The notes: generated from the letters alone by a model not told the origin. Counted from the first letter of the stretch, positions 29,110-37,140 are shown. The stretch is 64,000 nt of DNA from IMGVR_UViG_3300023313_000001:1-64000, one strand, 5' to 3'. Numbers and translations are program-made.

Positions 29110-29184
29110 GGGCCTATGGTGGAATGGATATCACACAAGCCTACGAAGCTTGAGTTCCAGGTTCGAATCCTGGTAGGCCCGCCA
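29110..29184 (+). tRNA. tRNA-Arg(ACG)
   Basis: CAAGC-CTACGAA-GCTTG; GCCA. Confidence 0.9.
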
Positions 29185-29190
29185 AACAAT

Positions 29191-29268
29191 GCCCCTGTAG
29201 TCTAACTGGATAGGCACTTCACTACGAATGAAGACATTATGTAGGTTCGAATCCTATCAGGGGTGCCA
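29191..29268 (+). tRNA. tRNA-Arg(ACG), second non-identical copy
   Basis: CTTCA-CTACGAA-TGAAG; body nearly identical to tRNA-Arg(TCT) at 31086. Confidence 0.9.
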
Positions 29269-29564: not shown

Positions 29565-29846
29565 ATGAACATTCAAGAGATACTACAAGAATCATCAGAC
29601 ATTACCAAACAATTTGAACAGAAATGGGAGAATGCTGAAGAAGAGTTTGACCAAAGTCTTCGCCAAGCAAATATTAATGGGTATGATGGTGGAAGTGACA
29701 GTTATTATGAATTCAAAGAATACAGGAAAGTATTTTTTGATGTTTTATATGCTGGTAAATACACTGCAGATACTATAAAACGACTAGACGGATTGATATC
29801 CAGAGTATATGGATTAATCAATGATATGTCGGAGCATTTACAATAA
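29565..29846 (+). CDS. hypothetical late protein (MNIQEILQE start)
   Basis: TATAAATA upstream, GGAG RBS. Confidence 0.7.
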   Translation: MNIQEILQESSDITKQFEQKWENAEEEFDQSLRQANINGYDGGSDSYYEFKEYRKVFFDVLYAGKYTADTIKRLDGLISRVYGLINDMSEHLQ

Positions 29847-30385: not shown

Positions 30386-30434
30386 TTCACCGACAATAGC
30401 ATAAATAGAATACCAAACACATAGGAATTTAATC

Positions 30435-30827
30435 ATGCTTACATTAACAGAACAGAACAGAATTAGAAAATTAGCTGGAATGTCATTATTGACTGAGGCA
30501 GCAGGTCAAACGTATCACATACAGAATGAAGCAGACTTGAAAAAGTTGGCATCTAGGTACACTATAATGTATGATGAAGAAGGAGAATCTGTTGTGGTGT
30601 TAACCGATGTTGGACCAGATCTGTCGTCTAATGAATTATATGCCAAGTACGCCAATGATTTGGACCCAGCAGAGTTGGATGTGTTATCTGATTATCCACA
30701 TTTTGCAACATCAGTTACTGAGAAGCCTGGTATGGCTGAGTTCCCATTTGATCCAGAATATCGTACCTGGGCTAGCCATATCAAAATTGAACGACGTATA
30801 GCAAAACACTTACTGTCACAAATGTAA
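30435..30827 (+). CDS. MLTLTEQNRIRKLAGM-leader family protein, copy 1
   Basis: Shared 5' cassette with 34327, 34763 and 35535. Confidence 0.8.
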   Translation: MLTLTEQNRIRKLAGMSLLTEAAGQTYHIQNEADLKKLASRYTIMYDEEGESVVVLTDVGPDLSSNELYAKYANDLDPAELDVLSDYPHFATSVTEKPGMAEFPFDPEYRTWASHIKIERRIAKHLLSQM

Positions 30828-31085
30828 CACAAAGCTCAGGCGAAGGGCTAAAAATCAGCCGATACATAGGAAGTAGAAATTTATAACAATTTCTAGCAAT
30901 ATGCGGATGGCTGATGTAGATTAGGGTAGTCAACAACATTCCATTGCGTGTAACGGGTGTGTACACATTCGAGTCGAACTTCTGGCGTTGTGTGAAAGCA
31001 TCAGATCGAATCTTGACAGATTCTCCTCGCTCTAGTGTTGAGTGGTCTTATAGTGAATTCAGTAATAGACCGTCTTACTTGTAAT

Positions 31086-31162
31086 GCCCCTGTAGTCTAA
31101 TTGGATAGGCAACAGATTTCTACTCTGTTCGTATGTAGGTTCGAATCCTATCAGGGGTGCCA
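31086..31162 (+). tRNA. tRNA-Arg(TCT)
   Basis: ACAGA-TTTCTAC-TCTGT; GCCA. Confidence 0.9.
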
Positions 31163-31321
31163 AATCACGTCGTACGGGTAACCTAGGCGATGTCCAAAGT
31201 AGGGGCCATCGAATGCCAAGCTGAATTGGCGGACGGTGGGTCGGCCCTACTGCTTATCTGGTTGACCATTTCATTCAAACATACTATGATGTTGTATCGA
31301 TTTAATACAGAGGATACACTC

Positions 31322-31726
31322 ATGTCCACCAATAAAATACCTTCGTTAGATTTAGAAGAACACATACACCACTGTTGGAATATTACCAAAGATATCGATA
31401 CTCTGTATGAAGGTGTGTTAAATGTTGGAATGACTACCGATCAAATTGCAAACACGTTATTAGGACTATATCAATTATATGAATTAAAATTTGACGCGTT
31501 GTGGTTATCTTGTGAGCGACTATGGGCAGAGCAGGCAAAAATTGCGGATGAGCGAACTAAGTTGAAGCAGAAGTTACAAATGCAAGATAATGATCTGGCA
31601 AATCATCTAGCAGTGATTAACCAATTGGAAACTCAATTGTCTCAAGCTCGTGTAACAACTGCTGGTGATGAGTATGATGATGCTAAACGATCTATGGGAC
31701 TAAACGATGATATACAATCCAAGTAA
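31322..31726 (+). CDS. hypothetical protein (conserved phage motif DLEE.I..CW.IT.DI...IAN.LLG...LY.LKF)
   Basis: GAGGA RBS before 31322. Confidence 0.7.
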   Translation: MSTNKIPSLDLEEHIHHCWNITKDIDTLYEGVLNVGMTTDQIANTLLGLYQLYELKFDALWLSCERLWAEQAKIADERTKLKQKLQMQDNDLANHLAVINQLETQLSQARVTTAGDEYDDAKRSMGLNDDIQSK

Positions 31727-32300
31727 ACCATTTTTTATGGAGCTGGGTAGCAATTGCTTTGATACCTTAATTCCATTTGCTGAAGCTGGTTGGCATGGAA
31801 TCTTTGTAGAACCTGTGCCACATTATATGGCTAACTTGAGACAGTTGGGAAACTTTTCCAACTGTGCATACGAACAGTGTGCCATAGTATCCGATCCATC
31901 TATTTCTAGTATTAAAATGGCTAGATATGATGAGAATCATATTCCCGTAGATCAAGGATGGATGCACGGAATTGGTCATATTGATAGTGATATTCAGACG
32001 GGTGAAAAACTAATCACAGACACACATAAACTAGATATTCCTGTAGTGAAATGGATGGCACATGCCAAAACCCTGGATCAGATAATTCTTGAGTACAATG
32101 TACATCATATAGATTTTATGAAAATAGACATTGAGGGACACGAGATTGATATCATTAAACAATATAGTTGGAATGTGATCCCAAAAATTATTAAGGTGGA
32201 GCATGCCCACTGTGATGATGACTTAATGAAGTTATTACTCGAACAGCATGGATACCATGTGTATTACGAACACAATGATTTATACGGTATTAGATTGTAA
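31707..32300 (+). CDS. FkbM-family methyltransferase
   Basis: F.ELGS, GW.GIFVEPV, IDFMKIDIEGHE. Confidence 0.85.
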   Translation: MIYNPSKPFFMELGSNCFDTLIPFAEAGWHGIFVEPVPHYMANLRQLGNFSNCAYEQCAIVSDPSISSIKMARYDENHIPVDQGWMHGIGHIDSDIQTGEKLITDTHKLDIPVVKWMAHAKTLDQIILEYNVHHIDFMKIDIEGHEIDIIKQYSWNVIPKIIKVEHAHCDDDLMKLLLEQHGYHVYYEHNDLYGIRL

Positions 32301-32386
32301 ACAACAGTCAAGTATGGGAGACACATATGTTGACAACAATCATTACACAGTTATTGGCAACATGTTGCCTACCATAGGAGACTATT

Positions 32387-33529
32387 GTGGATTTACTCAA
32401 TATACCGAAAACTATTCATATAGGTGTCAATAAACGAAATGACACTTATACTGGTCATTTAGCTTATGTAATCTATACTGATGAAAAAGGCAAGAGACGG
32501 AAAGAATGCAGTTGGGAAAGCTGGAGAGATACCTCGATCGATCCAATTGATTATGATAACGTGCCAACTTCAGGATTTGTATTAAACAAGGGTGTCGGTG
32601 GTGGTAGATCTGGCGGTGGATGGAATGCTCGCAATGAATACATTCGGGTATACGATCCTCGTAATTTTGAGTTTGAAATTTCGGTAGCCAATTTATTATT
32701 CATATTGCAAGAGACAAATTCAATTAAAGGCAAAGGACTCGAAGGAGAATTTGTCTACTCATGGTCAGGAGCAGATTTAGTCCTACTCCCTGTGGCCAGT
32801 GCAGAATATGCTGCATCAACCGAATTTACAAATGCAAAAACCATGAAAGTCACCAAGAAAGATATGGTGGAAGGTTGTGTATATCTTAGTAAAGATATGA
32901 GAGAATTAGTTTACTTAGGTCGACATAAATGTAGACAATATTACGGATATAGTGATACATTCGGTTATAATGAATTAACCACACCTCCGGAAAAATTCTT
33001 TCATGTTTTTTATGATGTAGAAACTGAGAAGTATGATTTCGAACGTGGATTTACCAAATTATGTAAAAAGGTTAGTGATGAATCCTACCACGATTATGCT
33101 AATCTACATACTGAATTGGTTGATAGCAAATATTGTTCACTGTTATCCAAAACAATACTGACCCCTGTTACAATAGATGACATGCCTCCAACAATATGGA
33201 GAGATTGTAAGTTTTTCATTAGACGTGATGACCATTATGATATGTATCAAATAACAAACAATCACTGGAAATGTAGTCATAACGATAATACACCGTTGAA
33301 TACTGTTATCACATTAGATGGTGACACTGTAACTGATATCGAATTTGGTTCACGTGAAGTTAAACCTAGACACGGTGGGTTTAATCATGGACCGTCATAT
33401 AAAGAACACTACATTGACCATACAAAATTAGTAAAAATGGGTGACATTGAAATGTTTACCATAGAATATTTACTAGAATCTGGATTAACATTAGGAGTAC
33501 AAGATTATGTCCAACGACAATCAAATTAA
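32387..33529 (+). CDS. conserved phage hypothetical protein
   Basis: ORF track; LAYVIY.DEKG..RKE.SW.SWR, GFVLNK.VGG, RVYDPR.FEFEI. Confidence 0.75.
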   Translation: MDLLNIPKTIHIGVNKRNDTYTGHLAYVIYTDEKGKRRKECSWESWRDTSIDPIDYDNVPTSGFVLNKGVGGGRSGGGWNARNEYIRVYDPRNFEFEISVANLLFILQETNSIKGKGLEGEFVYSWSGADLVLLPVASAEYAASTEFTNAKTMKVTKKDMVEGCVYLSKDMRELVYLGRHKCRQYYGYSDTFGYNELTTPPEKFFHVFYDVETEKYDFERGFTKLCKKVSDESYHDYANLHTELVDSKYCSLLSKTILTPVTIDDMPPTIWRDCKFFIRRDDHYDMYQITNNHWKCSHNDNTPLNTVITLDGDTVTDIEFGSREVKPRHGGFNHGPSYKEHYIDHTKLVKMGDIEMFTIEYLLESGLTLGVQDYVQRQSN

Positions 33530-33929
33530 AGACTACAGAACTAAGGTAGAAGCCAAACGATCAGCTCTAGGCAGTAAACCTAGAGTGAACTACGTAACTA
33601 ATATGTTACTACCACTCAACGATAGTAAGTTGAATCTCAATTTAATGAATACAGAAAAGGCGTGCATAGATGTTGCACAACAGCTTGCAATGATGCATAA
33701 CGCACAAGTACAAGCTAATGAATGGTTAGGTACTTCACAATCACTTACGGTAGGTAATTTCAAAGTGGAAGAGTGGGTGGAAGATATTAGAACTCGTTTG
33801 TCTATTATTAACTGGGATCAAGAAAAACAAAAACTAAATGCTATGGACACCAAGCTAGCTGGATTGTTAAGTGAGGATGCCAAAACTGCTAATGCTATTG
33901 CAGACATTGCAGGCGAATTAGGTTTATAG
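33507..33929 (+). CDS. hypothetical protein, partner of the preceding gene
   Basis: ORF track, AGGAG RBS. Confidence 0.7.
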   Translation: MSNDNQIKDYRTKVEAKRSALGSKPRVNYVTNMLLPLNDSKLNLNLMNTEKACIDVAQQLAMMHNAQVQANEWLGTSQSLTVGNFKVEEWVEDIRTRLSIINWDQEKQKLNAMDTKLAGLLSEDAKTANAIADIAGELGL

Positions 33930-33935
33930 AATTAC

Positions 33936-34089
33936 CCACACTGGTACCTGATATATTACATTACTATGCATGGTAATGTAATACCAAGCGATTAGGGCAT
34001 GGTATCACGGACATTTGAACAGTATGCTCCTATGCATGGGAGTTGCTACTACATAATGTTCACGGGTTCGACTCCCGATGTGTGGTCCA
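33936..34089 (+). ncRNA. enlarged tRNA-like RNA (~154 nt) with T arm and CCA
   Basis: CCACAC/GTGTGG terminal stem, T-CCA, CGGG-TTCGACT-CCCG T arm, two long internal hairpins. Confidence 0.55.
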
Positions 34090-34326
34090 AATAATGCGAT
34101 GAAGTAGGTACAGCATCTAAATAGTCCAATGATGTAGGTTGTACAGTCGACCGTGCACAAAAAGCTGCAGCAAATTTTGCCGACTACGTATCATAGATAG
34201 TATGATTTTGGTTAAACTAATTTAATATGAAAGTAGTCCCTACATATTCATTAGACTTGAGATGATAGTTTACGTGGTGAGATGCCTGGTTGGTATAAAT
34301 ACAATACATTATATAGGAATTTAATC

Positions 34327-34734
34327 ATGCTCACATTAACAGAACAGAACAGAATTAGAAAATTAGCTGGAATGCCATTATTGACTGAGGCAGCAGGCAT
34401 GTCGGCAGGGCCGTCTGGTACTCCCATATCAATGAACCAAGTAGTTGAATACAAACGACGTGGATTCGTAGTAGCATATAAATACGATTTCTATGCAGAT
34501 GAACCAGACGACGAACTGCGTGATATGTACGGTGATGAAGAAGATTGGCCAACTAATAGTGCAGAGTTAGCTGATTACGGTTACGAACCAGATGTGTTAG
34601 CATTTAGATCTAAAGGTGATATGATCGGGTATGCTAAACAAGAAGATGATACAGAGAAATTTGTTTTCGTAAACGATACTACATTACGGTATGAACGTGA
34701 TACAGGTAGTTGGATTGAATACGTAATAGTGTAA
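34327..34734 (+). CDS. MLTLTEQNRIRKLAGM-leader family protein, copy 2 (acidic cargo)
   Basis: Cassette start ATG 34327. Confidence 0.8.
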   Translation: MLTLTEQNRIRKLAGMPLLTEAAGMSAGPSGTPISMNQVVEYKRRGFVVAYKYDFYADEPDDELRDMYGDEEDWPTNSAELADYGYEPDVLAFRSKGDMIGYAKQEDDTEKFVFVNDTTLRYERDTGSWIEYVIV

Positions 34735-34762
34735 ATACAATACATTATATAGGAATTTAATC

Positions 34763-35506
34763 ATGCTCACATTAACAGAACAGAACAGAATTAGAAAATT
34801 AGCTGGAATGCCATTATTGACTGAGGCAGCAGGCATGTCGGCAGGGTATGGTTTTGATCAACTGTCATACCACCAAAAATTGGTTGCCATAGCAAGTTTG
34901 ACAGCATACATGGAAGGTCCATGGGAATGGGACAGAGAAGATCGAGACGATTTGGCAGGATACGAGGATGCTGACAATGATGATGTCTTTGATGCATACA
35001 TGCGTAGTCATCAATTGGATATAACAAAGTTAACTCGCACTGAAATCTCACAACGCTGGAAAGATCTATTAAACAACGTGAGTGATGTAGCCTCAGATGC
35101 CGTTCGGTATGCATCTAATCCACGCGCTGTCGCAGAACAGCACCGACTCAGAGCAGACACTAAACCATTATTGACAGAAATGTCCACACAATCCCACCCA
35201 TTTATAGACCATCTACAATCTATGATAGCAGATGGTTCATCTGAATATTCTGATGCAGATGTTGCCTGGATAGAACGTGGTGAAGCCACTATCATTATCG
35301 ATAGGGATGTGGAAATGTACGCGGATGACATGGAATCACTGGACAGGAGATTTGAATCTTATGGATTTAATGAATATCGTGATTATGAATGGGGTATTGA
35401 GCGAGGGGATGATGGAGCACATGCTATTAGGATTTTAAACTTATCTATGTTGGATAATAAAAATGTGCAATCCATTTTAGAGTCTATATGTGGACCAGAA
35501 GACTAA
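34763..35506 (+). CDS. MLTLTEQNRIRKLAGM-leader family protein, copy 3 (two cargo modules)
   Basis: Internal second PLLTE-MSTQSHP. Confidence 0.8.
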   Translation: MLTLTEQNRIRKLAGMPLLTEAAGMSAGYGFDQLSYHQKLVAIASLTAYMEGPWEWDREDRDDLAGYEDADNDDVFDAYMRSHQLDITKLTRTEISQRWKDLLNNVSDVASDAVRYASNPRAVAEQHRLRADTKPLLTEMSTQSHPFIDHLQSMIADGSSEYSDADVAWIERGEATIIIDRDVEMYADDMESLDRRFESYGFNEYRDYEWGIERGDDGAHAIRILNLSMLDNKNVQSILESICGPED

Positions 35507-35534
35507 ATACAATACATTATATAGGAATTTAATC

Positions 35535-36290
35535 ATGCTTACATTAACAGAACAGAACAGAATTAGAAAATTAGCTGGAATGCCATTATTGACTGAAATG
35601 TCCACACAATCCCACCCAGCATCTTACATGAATCATGGTGCAAATATACCATTTGAAGACGGTAAGGATGGAATAGTATTCTTAGACGATAACAATCTTT
35701 TGTATGGCCTGGTTGGGGATGGTGTGAATAATTTCGAAGGAATTAAACGAATTTTCAGAGATTTCAGTAAAGGCCAGAGTTTCGATAGTGGTAGTGATAT
35801 GATGGTTGAATTTCTCCGTGACATCCCAGACCACGAAAAATGGTATAACGGGAAAGTACATGAAGTGACTAACCTAGCTGAATATCTAGATTTAGATGAT
35901 GATGATAGTGTATACGAACCTGTTGATCGTAAGAAATACCCTAGAACCAAGTTATCACCAAAGCTAACAGAAATGGCAGACCCACGTTCATCCGCAGCAG
36001 CTTTGTTCATGGATGAGAATGATGAAGTAGCAATCGATCAGGATCCTGATCAAATGCGTGATCACATTAGTCAAATCGGTCGTCGGAACTTGGTACGCGG
36101 TTGGCGCAAGAGTATTGAGCAATTTAGACAACAGATATCTAGAGCTGGACAACGTGATCCAGACAGTGTTCAACGAAACACAGAGGTGTTAAATAGATTC
36201 ATACGATACAATCGGTCTAAGTATGCTAATAATCAAGTCTTTTTCCACACAGACGAGTTTGCTGTACTATATTGCGGATCTATAGATTAA
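35535..36290 (+). CDS. MLTLTEQNRIRKLAGM-leader family protein, copy 4 (two cargo modules)
   Basis: LLTE-MSTQSHP followed by internal KLTE-MADP. Confidence 0.8.
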   Translation: MLTLTEQNRIRKLAGMPLLTEMSTQSHPASYMNHGANIPFEDGKDGIVFLDDNNLLYGLVGDGVNNFEGIKRIFRDFSKGQSFDSGSDMMVEFLRDIPDHEKWYNGKVHEVTNLAEYLDLDDDDSVYEPVDRKKYPRTKLSPKLTEMADPRSSAAALFMDENDEVAIDQDPDQMRDHISQIGRRNLVRGWRKSIEQFRQQISRAGQRDPDSVQRNTEVLNRFIRYNRSKYANNQVFFHTDEFAVLYCGSID

Positions 36291-36442
36291 TGGTGTAAAA
36301 CTGTGAATTAATAGTTGCTTATAATTAAATAAGCAACTATAATCTTCACAATTGGTAAAGGGACTGGAACGGCTTCCAGCTTTACGTCGCTCATAATGAG
36401 TTTAGCCGATAATTCAAATTACTATGTCAATGGAGACAGATA

Positions 36443-36609: not shown

Positions 36610-36672
36610 ATTCGTTGACTACAATATTTAATTCCAGTACACTACATCATTAACTCAATTTAGGAGCACCTC

Positions 36673-37140
36673 ATGACTTTTGGTAAACTAGATGAAGAAT
36701 CCACTTTTGGAGATAGACTCACAGAAATGATGAAGGCTGACAATGCTGATGATCCCAGTTCCATAGATACTCCGAAACGCGATGGTGGAACTTTACATGG
36801 ATGGTATTCGAAAATGTTTACGTTTGAAAGTAAAAAAGATCCCTTCACAGTAGTATTTGGTCATATTAGTGGTGACTCACGTTGGAGAGATGGAAAACCG
36901 ATTAAAACATCTCCAGTGATAACTTTAAACACAGAGGATCGGATTCTGGAAACTGAAAATACGATCTATCGACTAGGAAATGAGGCAACTGAACAAGACA
37001 TCATGTCCATTGGGATGTTGCGGTATGACATCCCATCAGGACCGGAAGACTACCACGTAGATGATGTAACAGTACCTGAACCACTGTCGGAAGAAGAGCA
37101 AGCAAAGCTAGATGCCATGTTACAAGCGATGATATTTTAA
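36673..37140 (+). CDS. hypothetical protein (G.I.GD.RW.DG..I.TS.V...ET.NT.Y.L phage family)
   Basis: ORF track, AGGAG RBS. Confidence 0.7.
   Translation: MTFGKLDEESTFGDRLTEMMKADNADDPSSIDTPKRDGGTLHGWYSKMFTFESKKDPFTVVFGHISGDSRWRDGKPIKTSPVITLNTEDRILETENTIYRLGNEATEQDIMSIGMLRYDIPSGPEDYHVDDVTVPEPLSEEEQAKLDAMLQAMIF

What the first reader, a model, noticed from the sequence alone, without database searches (positions are those of the whole stretch)
30401..36290. Shuffled cassette array: one late-promoter/leader module fused to six unrelated acidic cargo domains
Seen: four genes share a near-identical ~95-115 bp unit (TAAATA late motif, RBS, MLTLTEQNRIRKLAGMxLLTE) and then diverge completely. In the tandem trio, the TAA of each unit's TAAATA is the stop codon of the previous gene. 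A second junction repeat (PLLTE-MSTQSHP, 36 bp, 1 mismatch) is internal in 34763 but directly follows the leader in 35535, and 35535 has another internal KLTE-M junction. Established: T4 internal proteins share an N-terminal capsid-targeting sequence cleaved by the prohead protease after L/I-x-E, and ipI is a polymorphic anti-restriction locus near the tRNA genes. Inference: this is a recombinational expression and packaging cassette system making polyproteins that are cut at LTE into separate D/E-rich effectors injected with the DNA, probably anti-defence proteins or nucleic-acid mimics.
Basis: partly seen in the sequence, partly recalled or inferred. Interest (0 to 1): 0.85.

Follow-up and report, generated by a model that had tools for sequence, protein, structure and literature searches.

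The report
Shared leader on four phage genes
Four genes in the tRNA region of an uncultured T4-like giant phage begin with the same late-type promoter and the same 21-residue peptide ending in a T4-type protease site, which is most likely a tag that loads unrelated proteins into the capsid: a known T4 strategy, here with a new tag, and not yet shown by experiment.

Summary
Four + strand genes (30435, 34327, 34763, 35535) share a unit of about 95-118 nt: a TAAATA motif, an AGGA ribosome-binding site and a 21-codon leader. The leader is 61-63/63 nt identical between copies, and the sequence after it is at random level.

The window is the first 64 kb of a 229.5-kb IMG/VR contig from a distant T4-superfamily jumbo phage. 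It encodes a gp55-like late sigma factor, DsbA, gp5/gp25/gp6-like baseplate proteins and gp46/47. The same TAAATA motif sits upstream of its baseplate and tail-fibre genes.

The leader carries LTE at residues 6 and 21. LTE|A is the T4 gp23 maturation site, and L-x-E is conserved at that site across the superfamily. One relative exists, in TARA short contigs. It keeps the peptide through synonymous changes and matches the second half of gene C end to end, so C is a fusion of two leader-cargo units.

Best reading (confidence about 0.55): these are capsid-targeted, protease-trimmed internal proteins like the T4 IPs, with a non-homologous tag, acidic cargo and two-module precursors.

- Packaging and cleavage are not shown.
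- The phage's own head protease was not reached.
- Cargo function is unknown, so the anti-defence or DNA-mimic idea has no support.
- The principle is already known for T-even IP loci.

The parts
30402..30434 (+). Unit A upstream part: TAAATA (30402-30407, here TAAATAG), a spacer 2 nt longer than in B-D, and AGGA at 30423-30426
30435..30827 (+). Gene A (130 aa). The leader is 30435-30497 (MLTLTEQNRIRKLAGMSLLTE), followed by AAG and a unique cargo
   Evidence: no Pfam/PHROG/PDB hit
34296..34326 (+). Unit B upstream part: (TA)TAAATAC late-promoter-like motif and AGGA ribosome-binding site
34327..34734 (+). Gene B (135 aa from the conserved ATG; the public gene call starts at 34282). The leader is 34327-34389, and AAGMSAG is shared with C
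   Evidence: P0002 is 150 aa
34732..34762 (+). Unit C upstream part. The TAA of TAAATAC is the stop codon of B
34763..35506 (+). Gene C (247 aa): leader, module C1, a degenerate internal leader and module C2
   Evidence: (two profile stretches)
35129..35200 (+). Internal vestigial leader of C (residues 123-146). PLLTE|MSTQSHP at 35165-35200 is 35/36 nt identical to the junction in D
35504..35534 (+). Unit D upstream part. The TAA of TAAATAC is the stop codon of C
35535..36290 (+). Gene D (251 aa). The leader is 35535-35597, followed directly by MSTQSHP. There is an internal KLTE|M at 35961-35975, which is a weak junction
36302..36350 (+). Strong hairpin just after the stop codon of D (-18.8 kcal/mol, z -8.15). 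It is the likely 3' end of the B-C-D transcripts

Best explanation
The four genes are the internal-protein locus of a distant T4-superfamily jumbo phage.

**Proposed mechanism.**
1. Each gene has its own late promoter (TAAATA, read by the gp55-like late sigma factor) and its own ribosome-binding site.
2. Each gene encodes a 21-residue N-terminal propeptide that acts as a capsid-targeting sequence, docking the protein to the scaffolding core of the prohead.
3. The T4-type (S77) prohead protease then cuts after L-T-E, at residues 6 and 21. In the two fused genes C and D it also cuts at the internal PLLTE|M and KLTE|M sites. This frees cargo domains of about 100-120 residues that stay in the head and enter the host with the DNA.
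4. The near-identical unit, which runs from the previous gene's stop codon to the cleavage site, also serves as the homology patch for recombination. New cargo ORFs are placed behind the tag and units are duplicated or fused there, as proposed for the T-even IP loci.

**Shown:** the repeat anatomy, the mosaic breakpoints, the fusion in C, selection on the peptide, the T4-type gene content, and the same motif in front of virion genes.

**Inferred:** late transcription, capsid targeting, cleavage, injection, and any function of the cargo.
For: **Anatomy.** The unit occurs 4 times. The leader is 61-63/63 nt identical, followed by an abrupt drop to random identity at three nested breakpoints: after LLTE, after AAG and after MSAG.

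**Phage type.**
- DNA polymerase is closest to Xoo-sp13, CM1, RsoM2USA and XacN1, at about 40%.
- Other T4-type genes found: Phage_DsbA; RnlA, RnlB, topoisomerase II, Td, Frd and NrdAB; gp5-, gp25- and gp6-like baseplate proteins; a gp55-like late sigma factor (phrog_234, 9e-26); gp47/gp46-like proteins; and T4_baseplate.

**Promoter.**
- TAAATAC occurs 27 times on the + strand and 4 on the - strand, 31 in total against 18.5 +/- 4.2 expected.
- TAAATA lies 27-53 nt upstream of the gp25-like gene, the 2702-aa giant gene, the 278-aa virion protein and four genes of the tail-fibre block (annotation).
- In the four units it lies at -31 or -33.

**Cleavage motif.**
- T4 gp23 LTE65|A66 aligns with LVE|N, LME|N, LME|S and LRE|A in the capsid proteins of jumbo relatives.
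- The protease of the PA5oct-type relative is Pfam Peptidase_S77. Its scaffold has 19 [LI]xE sites in 368 aa, and its gp67-like protein starts with a 9-residue peptide ending in ITE|G.
- T4 Alt is cut at ITE-6 and LTE-619, and T4 CTS propeptides are 10-20 residues long (PMC5694885).

**Selection on the peptide.**
- TARA protein P0005 carries the leader, with 5 synonymous codon differences and 1 I-to-L difference in 15 codons.
- It keeps both L-x-E sites (LTE, LVE|G) and has TAAATA 41 nt upstream of its start codon.
- In C's internal copy the leader has decayed but PLLTE is intact.

**Precedent in T4.**
- T4 ipII and ipIII share an identical ribosome-binding site and first 33 nt, then diverge. 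IPI has a 19-residue leader ending in ITE|A and lies next to the tRNA cluster.
- The literature describes IPs as diverse proteins with only the CTS conserved (PMC3012670), and repeated regulatory elements at the IP loci (PMC2839356).
Against: - There is no direct evidence of packaging or cleavage.
- The phage's own head module (protease, scaffold, capsid protein) was not seen. Only contig positions 1-150,700 of 229,507 could be read.
- The leader has no sequence similarity to the T4 CTS.
- Mature T4 IPs are basic (pI 8.9-9.5), whereas these proteins are acidic (pI 4.3-5.1).
- [LI]xE is a common tripeptide, at 9.5 per 1000 residues in this contig.
- The neighbouring gene 36673 also has an N-terminal LTE|M but sits behind a sigma-70-like promoter, so LTE on its own proves little.
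- Identity at synonymous sites within the genome could reflect recent duplication rather than function.
- Only one outside relative of the leader exists.
Confidence: 0.55

Rival explanations
1. The genes are a paralogous ORFan family whose conserved N-terminal helix serves a purpose unrelated to the capsid. Examples would be binding a common host or phage partner, oligomerisation or localisation. The LTE motifs would then be incidental, and the proteins would act inside the infected cell late in infection.
For: - The peptide is conserved under purifying selection, but nothing links it to the head.
- The cargo is acidic, unlike the T4 IPs.
- [LI]xE is frequent by chance.
- Both low-confidence models place a helix at residues 4-14.
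Against: - Both L-x-E sites are retained in the TARA relative despite an indel (LLTE against LVE), each followed by a small residue as at T4 sites.
- In C's internal copy only PLLTE is preserved.
- The promoter motif is the one shared with virion genes.
- The length of 21 residues and the N-terminal position match CTS propeptides (PMC5694885).
Confidence: 0.2
2. The conserved unit is mainly a DNA-level element. It would be a mobile regulatory or recombination cassette (promoter, ribosome-binding site and translation-initiation region) that shuffles ORFans, like the PeSLs of RB49 and phi1. The encoded peptide would be a by-product of the homology patch.
For: - Within the genome the leader is identical at synonymous sites too (61-63/63), and the breakpoints are abrupt and nested.
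- The unit starts exactly at the previous gene's stop codon.
- T4-type phages shuffle ORFans through repeated regulatory cassettes of about 100 bp, and similar elements flank the IP loci (PMC2839356).
Against: - The unit has no sigma-70-type promoter above the chance level and no stem-loop (RNA fold z-scores -0.57, +0.29 and +1.48). It is therefore not a PeSL.
- The TARA relative conserves the amino acids while changing 5 of 15 codons synonymously.
- A leader remnant persists in frame inside C, where it has no regulatory role.
- This reading is compatible with the best explanation rather than exclusive of it.
Confidence: 0.12
3. The proteins are capsid-targeted but are expendable prohead-core or scaffold accessories, like T4 gp67, gp68 and the acidic internal peptides. 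They would be cut up and mostly expelled during maturation, not delivered as effectors.
For: - The composition is acidic and there are extra internal LTE sites.
- T4 core proteins are acidic and are cut at several L-x-E sites (PMC5694885).
- The scaffold of the PA5oct-type relative has 19 such sites.
Against: - The genes lie in the tRNA/ORFan region, not in a head module.
- They are ORFans with unrelated cargo, which is unlike conserved core proteins.
- Each has only one or two candidate LTE sites beyond the leader.
Confidence: 0.1
4. The arrangement is an assembly artefact: a repeat of about 118 nt caused chimeric joins, so the order or the fusions of the cargo modules are not real.
For: The B and C units are 117/118 identical, which is long enough to tangle a short-read assembly graph. 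No reads are available.
Against: - The copies differ by SNPs and by their flanks.
- All ORFs are intact and in frame.
- An independent leader-cargo gene occurs in two separate TARA/ENA assemblies and is colinear with the second half of C.
- A misjoin could change the order of the modules but could not create the leaders.
Confidence: 0.03

Closest known systems
T4 internal proteins IPI, IPII and IPIII with their capsid-targeting sequence (CTS), removed by the gp21 prohead protease
   Same: - Small, mutually unrelated proteins share a short N-terminal propeptide that ends in L/I-x-E.
- The ribosome-binding site and first codons are identical at the DNA level between paralogues (T4 ipII/ipIII).
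- The locus lies in a plastic region next to tRNA genes.
- The phage belongs to the same superfamily, with a gp55-type late sigma factor.
   Different: - The leader sequence is not homologous, and it is 21 residues long with two candidate sites.
- The cargo is acidic rather than basic.
- Two of the four genes are two-module fusions with an internal site.
- Only late-type promoters are evident.
- The phage is a distant jumbo lineage, about 40% identical in DNA polymerase to XacN1-type phages.
- Nothing has been shown experimentally.
T4 Alt (a packaged ADP-ribosyltransferase)
   Same: Alt is processed at ITE-6 and LTE-619 (PMC5694885). The leader here has LTE at residue 6 and again at residue 21, and LTE inside C and D.
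   Different: There is no sequence or domain similarity to Alt, and no Pfam hit.
SPN3US gp53/gp54 and other propeptide-bearing ejection proteins of phiKZ-like giant phages
   Same: Paralogues with identical N-terminal 15 residues that contain protease motifs while the rest has diverged. The authors interpret this as CTS-like (PMC5694885).
   Different: Those proteins are true paralogues (34% identity) with propeptides of about 125 residues and A/S-x-E sites. They are cut by an S80 protease in a different phage lineage.
PeSL mobile regulatory cassettes of T4-type hyperplastic regions (RB49/phi1), and the analogous elements at T-even IP loci
   Same: A repeated unit of about 100 bp runs from the upstream stop codon to the start of the next gene. 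It flanks ORFans and offers a homology patch for modular shuffling (PMC2839356).
   Different: PeSLs are sigma-70-type early promoters with a GC-rich stem-loop and stop at the ATG. This unit has a late-type TAAATA motif, has no stem-loop and extends 63 nt into the coding sequence.

Membership tests
T4-type capsid-targeted internal proteins (CTS plus gp21 cleavage) | Encoded by a T4-superfamily phage that has an S77 (gp21-type) prohead protease | tested here: inconclusive
   T4-type gene content is shown: a gp55-like sigma factor, DsbA, gp5/25/6-like baseplate proteins, gp46/47, RnlA/B, topoisomerase II and PolB. The protease gene itself was not in the 150.7 kb of 229.5 kb that I could read. 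The PA5oct-type relative has a Peptidase_S77 between its portal and capsid genes.
T4-type capsid-targeted internal proteins (CTS plus gp21 cleavage) | A short (10-20 residue) N-terminal propeptide shared by otherwise unrelated small proteins | tested here: met
   The 21-residue leader is identical in 20 of 21 positions in four proteins. The cargo modules are unrelated, with a best pairwise E-value of 0.78.
T4-type capsid-targeted internal proteins (CTS plus gp21 cleavage) | The propeptide ends in the protease motif L/I-x-E, usually followed by a small residue | tested here: met
   The leaders end LLTE|AAG in A, B and C and LLTE|M in D, with an additional LTE at residue 6. The TARA relative has LVE|G. 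The same P3-P1' sequence occurs at T4 gp23 LTE65|A66.
T4-type capsid-targeted internal proteins (CTS plus gp21 cleavage) | Sequence homology to the T4 CTS | tested here: not met
   The T4 ipI, ipII and ipIII N-termini read from the T4 record show no resemblance to the leader. The PHROG and Pfam scans gave no hits.
T4-type capsid-targeted internal proteins (CTS plus gp21 cleavage) | Expressed when proheads assemble (late promoter) | tested here: inconclusive
   TAAATA lies at -31/-33, the same motif as upstream of the baseplate and tail-fibre genes, and a gp55-like sigma factor is present. There are no transcript data.
T4-type capsid-targeted internal proteins (CTS plus gp21 cleavage) | Present in virions in the cleaved form and injected with the DNA | not testable with these tools
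   The phage is uncultured and known only from a metagenome.
T4-type capsid-targeted internal proteins (CTS plus gp21 cleavage) | Basic mature protein that packs with the DNA | tested here: not met
   pI is 4.3-5.1, against 8.9-9.5 for the T4 IPs.
PeSL regulatory cassettes | A sigma-70-type early promoter with an adjacent stable stem-loop, confined to the intergenic space | tested here: not met
   Sigma-70-like sites are not above the chance level (36 found against 33.2 expected). The unit does not fold better than shuffled sequence. It extends 63 nt into the ORF.

The most novel reading that the evidence does not exclude
A T4-superfamily jumbo phage uses a new, non-homologous capsid-delivery tag in an integron-like cassette array.
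- Any ORF recombined behind the unit (late promoter, ribosome-binding site, tag) would be expressed late, loaded into the prohead and released by the head protease.
- Units could be fused into polyproteins that the protease cuts again at internal LTE sites, delivering several acidic effectors from one precursor.
- The same tag would circulate among marine phages with different cargo.
Probability: 0.3. Interest if true: 0.6.

Novelty: new variant of a known kind. Interest (0 to 1): 0.45.

Why it matters
If confirmed, this would extend the T4 rule of one tag and many injected proteins, so far documented in T-even coliphages, to a distant uncultured jumbo lineage.
- It would give a second, unrelated capsid-targeting sequence, usable as a packaging tag.
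- It would show that such tags can carry acidic cargo and two-module cargo.
- It would give a simple sequence signature for finding injected proteins in metagenomic phages: late promoter, shared leader, L-x-E, then unrelated ORFans.

The principle itself is already known, so the gain is one of breadth and tools, not a new concept.

Tried and rejected
**Relatives of the phage and the leader**
- Megablast of the locus against 50,697 phage records: no match.
- The leader peptide as degenerate DNA in IMG/VR, twice: only this contig.
- The same in JGI metagenome contigs: 0 hits.
- A profile of C2 plus P0005 in metagenome contigs: 264 pattern hits, none confirmed.
- The search for homologous proteins with C, with P0005 and with the leader region of B: only the query's own or the window's proteins.
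- A leader profile against 1.84 billion representative proteins: the four window proteins plus P0005 only.
- The flanking 515-aa protein found no close relative in IMG/VR.
- Homologues of the 380-aa neighbour exist in 9 other contigs. Those contigs carry no leader and no comparable repeat array.

**Function of the cargo**
- Pfam, PHROGs and PDB sequence search: nothing credible. The 2e-4 hit of B to an LH2 gamma chain has no passing stretch and covers the leader, so I rejected it.
- Single-sequence AlphaFold models of C and D: pLDDT 42.5 and 37.1. I did not run a fold search, because it would be meaningless on such models.

**The head module of this phage**
- Nine successful steps along the contig (one further look-up failed on a GTG start) reached 150.7 kb without finding it.
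- Capsid-protein searches in IMG/VR returned other contigs only.

**Other checks**
- No other family of shared N-terminal leaders in 141 kb.
- No Rfam family in the locus.
- I considered the ClpP-like gene at 63187-63942 as the head protease and rejected it on context: it sits among nucleotide-metabolism and replication genes, and its best PHROG matches are ATP-dependent proteases.

Full report
**What is there.** The region holds four + strand genes:
- A: 30435-30827, 130 aa
- B: 34327-34734, 135 aa
- C: 34763-35506, 247 aa
- D: 35535-36290, 251 aa

All four start with the same 21 residues, MLTLTEQNRIRKLAGM[P/S]LLTE. At the DNA level repeat finder reports four copies of a 118-nt unit and a separate 36-nt pair with one mismatch. 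The alignment shows the common core: TAAATA, a spacer, AGGA, ATG and 21 codons.

Pairwise, the leader is 61-63/63 nt identical and the 40 nt upstream are 30-34/40. The next 60 nt fall to 13-19/60, which is random level. B-C is the exception, because those two share a further AAGMSAG. The breakpoints are nested: D diverges after LLTE, A after LLTEAAG, and B and C after LLTEAAGMSAG.

The TAA of TAAATA is the stop codon of B and of C. A lies 3.4 kb upstream of the trio, separated by tRNA-Arg and four genes, among them an FkbM methyltransferase and two conserved phage ORFs. A strong hairpin (-18.8 kcal/mol, z -8.15) follows D, and tRNA-Lys comes next. The cargo parts are unrelated to one another, with a best pairwise E-value of 0.78.

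**Corrections to the description.**
- The junction inside C is a degenerate copy of the whole leader (residues 123-146, reading ..AEQHRLRADTKPLLTE|MSTQSHP). The leader profile detects it as a second stretch.
- The KLTE|M junction inside D shares only nine bases with the others and does not score as a leader. The evidence therefore supports five cargo modules well and a sixth only weakly.
- The proteins are moderately acidic, at pI 4.3-5.1. Their D+E content is at the 82nd-94th percentile of 159 proteins of the same contig.

**Where it comes from.** The window is positions 1-64,000 of IMGVR_UViG_3300023313_000001, a 229,507-bp contig. No phage record matches the locus at the DNA level. By looking up exact proteins I read the contig as far as 150.7 kb. 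It carries:
- PhoH, Td, an NAD-dependent ligase, DHFR and a two-subunit topoisomerase II
- an Acb1 homologue, NrdAB, dCMP deaminase and RnlA- and RnlB-like ligases
- a DnaB-type helicase and Phage_DsbA
- a split family-B polymerase with an intein, and RNase H
- a block of tail-fibre and baseplate genes: gp5-, gp25- and gp6-like proteins, a 2702-aa giant and T4_baseplate
- a gp55-like late sigma factor (phrog_234, E 9e-26) next to gp47- and gp46-like genes

The polymerase is closest to the jumbo phages Xoo-sp13, CM1/RAS14, RsoM2USA and XacN1 (38-41%), then to the PA5oct group (32%). This is a distant member of the T4 superfamily. The head module was not reached.

**The promoter.** TAAATAC occurs 27 times on the + strand and 4 times on the - strand of the window, 31 in all against 18.5 +/- 4.2 expected. 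About fifteen of these sites lie 20-45 nt upstream of a start codon with a ribosome-binding site.

The same TAAATA core lies 27-53 nt upstream of the gp25-like gene, the giant baseplate gene, a 278-aa virion protein and four genes of the tail-fibre block. The base before it varies there, just as it does among units A-D. With a gp55-type sigma factor and DsbA in the genome, this is best read as the phage's version of the T4 late promoter TATAAATA. The late-promoter reading is inference, since there are no transcript data. The units contain no stable RNA structure (z -0.57, +0.29, +1.48) and no Rfam family.

**The cleavage motif.**
- In T4 the gp23 maturation site is LTE65|A66. In a capsid-protein alignment this position reads LVE|N, LME|N, LME|S and LRE|A in PA5oct-type, Atu_ph07-type and metagenomic jumbo relatives.
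- The PA5oct-type phage Cassandra has a Pfam Peptidase_S77 protease between its portal and capsid genes. Its scaffold has 19 [LI]xE sites in 368 aa, and its gp67-like protein begins with a nine-residue peptide ending in ITE|G.
- Published mass spectrometry shows that T4 Alt is cut at ITE-6 and LTE-619. The same paper describes T4 CTS propeptides as 10-20 residues long (PMC5694885).
- The leader here has LTE at residue 6 and LLTE|A (or |M) at residue 21.

**Is the peptide itself functional?** A profile of the leader searched against 1.84 billion representative proteins finds only the four window proteins and one outsider, P0005. P0005 is 133 aa, scores E 5.7e-4, and comes from two short TARA/ENA contigs.
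- Its leader differs from the window's by five synonymous codon changes and one I-to-L change in 15 codons.
- It keeps both L-x-E sites despite an indel (LVE|G).
- It has TAAATA 41 nt upstream of its start codon.
- P0005 aligns end to end with residues 123-244 of C, at 28% identity and E 2e-5.

So the second half of C is a free-standing leader-cargo gene elsewhere, and C is a fusion of two units. Within that fusion the internal leader has decayed except for PLLTE|MSTQSHP, which is 35/36 nt identical to the junction in D. These facts argue for selection on the peptide, and particularly on the cleavage site, and for repeated recombination at the unit.

**Comparison with what is known.**
- From the T4 record, ipII and ipIII share an identical ribosome-binding site and first 33 nt and then diverge.
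- IPI has a 19-residue leader ending in ITE|A and sits beside the tRNA cluster.
- All three are basic.
- Rao and Black describe the T-even IPs as a highly diverse set of defence proteins with only a conserved CTS (PMC3012670).
- Arbiol et al. report more than 30 IP variants, note repeated regulatory elements at the two IP loci, and demonstrate shuffling through cassettes of about 100 bp (PeSLs) in RB49 and phi1 (PMC2839356).
- In SPN3US, two diverged paralogues share identical N-terminal 15 residues containing protease motifs (PMC5694885).

The present locus works like an IP locus. It is not a sequence member of the T4 CTS family, and it is not a PeSL (see the membership table).

**What remains open.**
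- Packaging, cleavage and injection are inferred, not shown.
- The cargo has no homologues and no family or structure hits, and the single-sequence models are unusable. The suggestion of anti-defence or DNA-mimic function has no evidence beyond analogy.
- The acidity is the opposite of the T4 IPs. It leaves room for a role as core or scaffold accessories.
- [LI]xE is common, at 9.5 per 1000 residues. The neighbouring gene 36673 also has an N-terminal LTE|M but lies behind a sigma-70-like promoter.
- No close relative of the phage exists in the collections, so cargo swapping could not be examined.

**Verdict.** The repeat array is real, and its anatomy is as described. The best-supported explanation, with confidence about 0.55, is a T4-IP-like locus of late-expressed, capsid-targeted, protease-trimmed proteins. 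It has a new tag, acidic cargo and fused two-module precursors. I rate it a new variant of a known kind, of moderate interest.

Noticed in passing
window 50655-50980: A permuted (two-piece, alpha-type) tmRNA: Rfam tmRNA_permuted scores 114.6 bits, and ARAGORN gives the tag ANDNFFATAIAA. It sits next to tRNA-Cys. This hints at an alphaproteobacterial host.
   Followed up: partly
window 640-717: ARAGORN calls a tRNA with anticodon CTA and labels it Pyl, meaning it would read the amber stop codon. Several genes of this contig end in TAG, among them the 2702-aa giant gene.
   Followed up: no
window 63187-63942: A ClpP-family protease gene (Pfam CLP_protease, 2.2e-17; best PHROG match is ATP-dependent protease) lies among the DHFR, primase-like and topoisomerase genes. 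It is probably not the head protease.
   Followed up: partly
window 36673-37140: The gene after D and tRNA-Lys starts with a 19-residue stretch ending in RLTE|M. It is as acidic as the cassette proteins, but it lies behind a sigma-70-like promoter (TTGACT, 17 nt, TACACT, at 36615-36643).
   Followed up: partly
window 29565-29846: An acidic 93-aa ORFan with TATAAATAC 34 nt upstream and ILQE at residues 6-9. It could be another late-expressed small protein with an L-x-E near its N-terminus.
   Followed up: no
window 33990-34090: The 360-nt gap upstream of B contains a tRNA-like T-arm/acceptor remnant (GGTTCGACTCCCG). Neither ARAGORN nor Rfam calls it. It may be a decayed tRNA.
   Followed up: partly
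L010:14291-19374 (contig about 105.4-110.4 kb): The family-B DNA polymerase is split by a 630-aa DUF7487 gene, and its second part carries an intein. A second DUF7487 gene lies next to nrdB.
   Followed up: no
L004:17712-18191 (contig about 70.3 kb): An Acb1 (anti-CBASS phosphodiesterase) homologue lies between the two topoisomerase II subunit genes, next to a DUF723 homing-endonuclease-like gene.
   Followed up: no
window 29110-29268: Two tandem tRNA-Arg(ACG) genes lie 7 nt apart within a 19-tRNA cluster (24.5-37.4 kb, plus 640 and 50454).
   Followed up: no
L007:120-150 and 585-650: In the TARA contig, the leader-bearing gene is bracketed by GC-rich terminator hairpins and followed by a sigma-70-like promoter. 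This is a self-contained cassette layout.
   Followed up: partly
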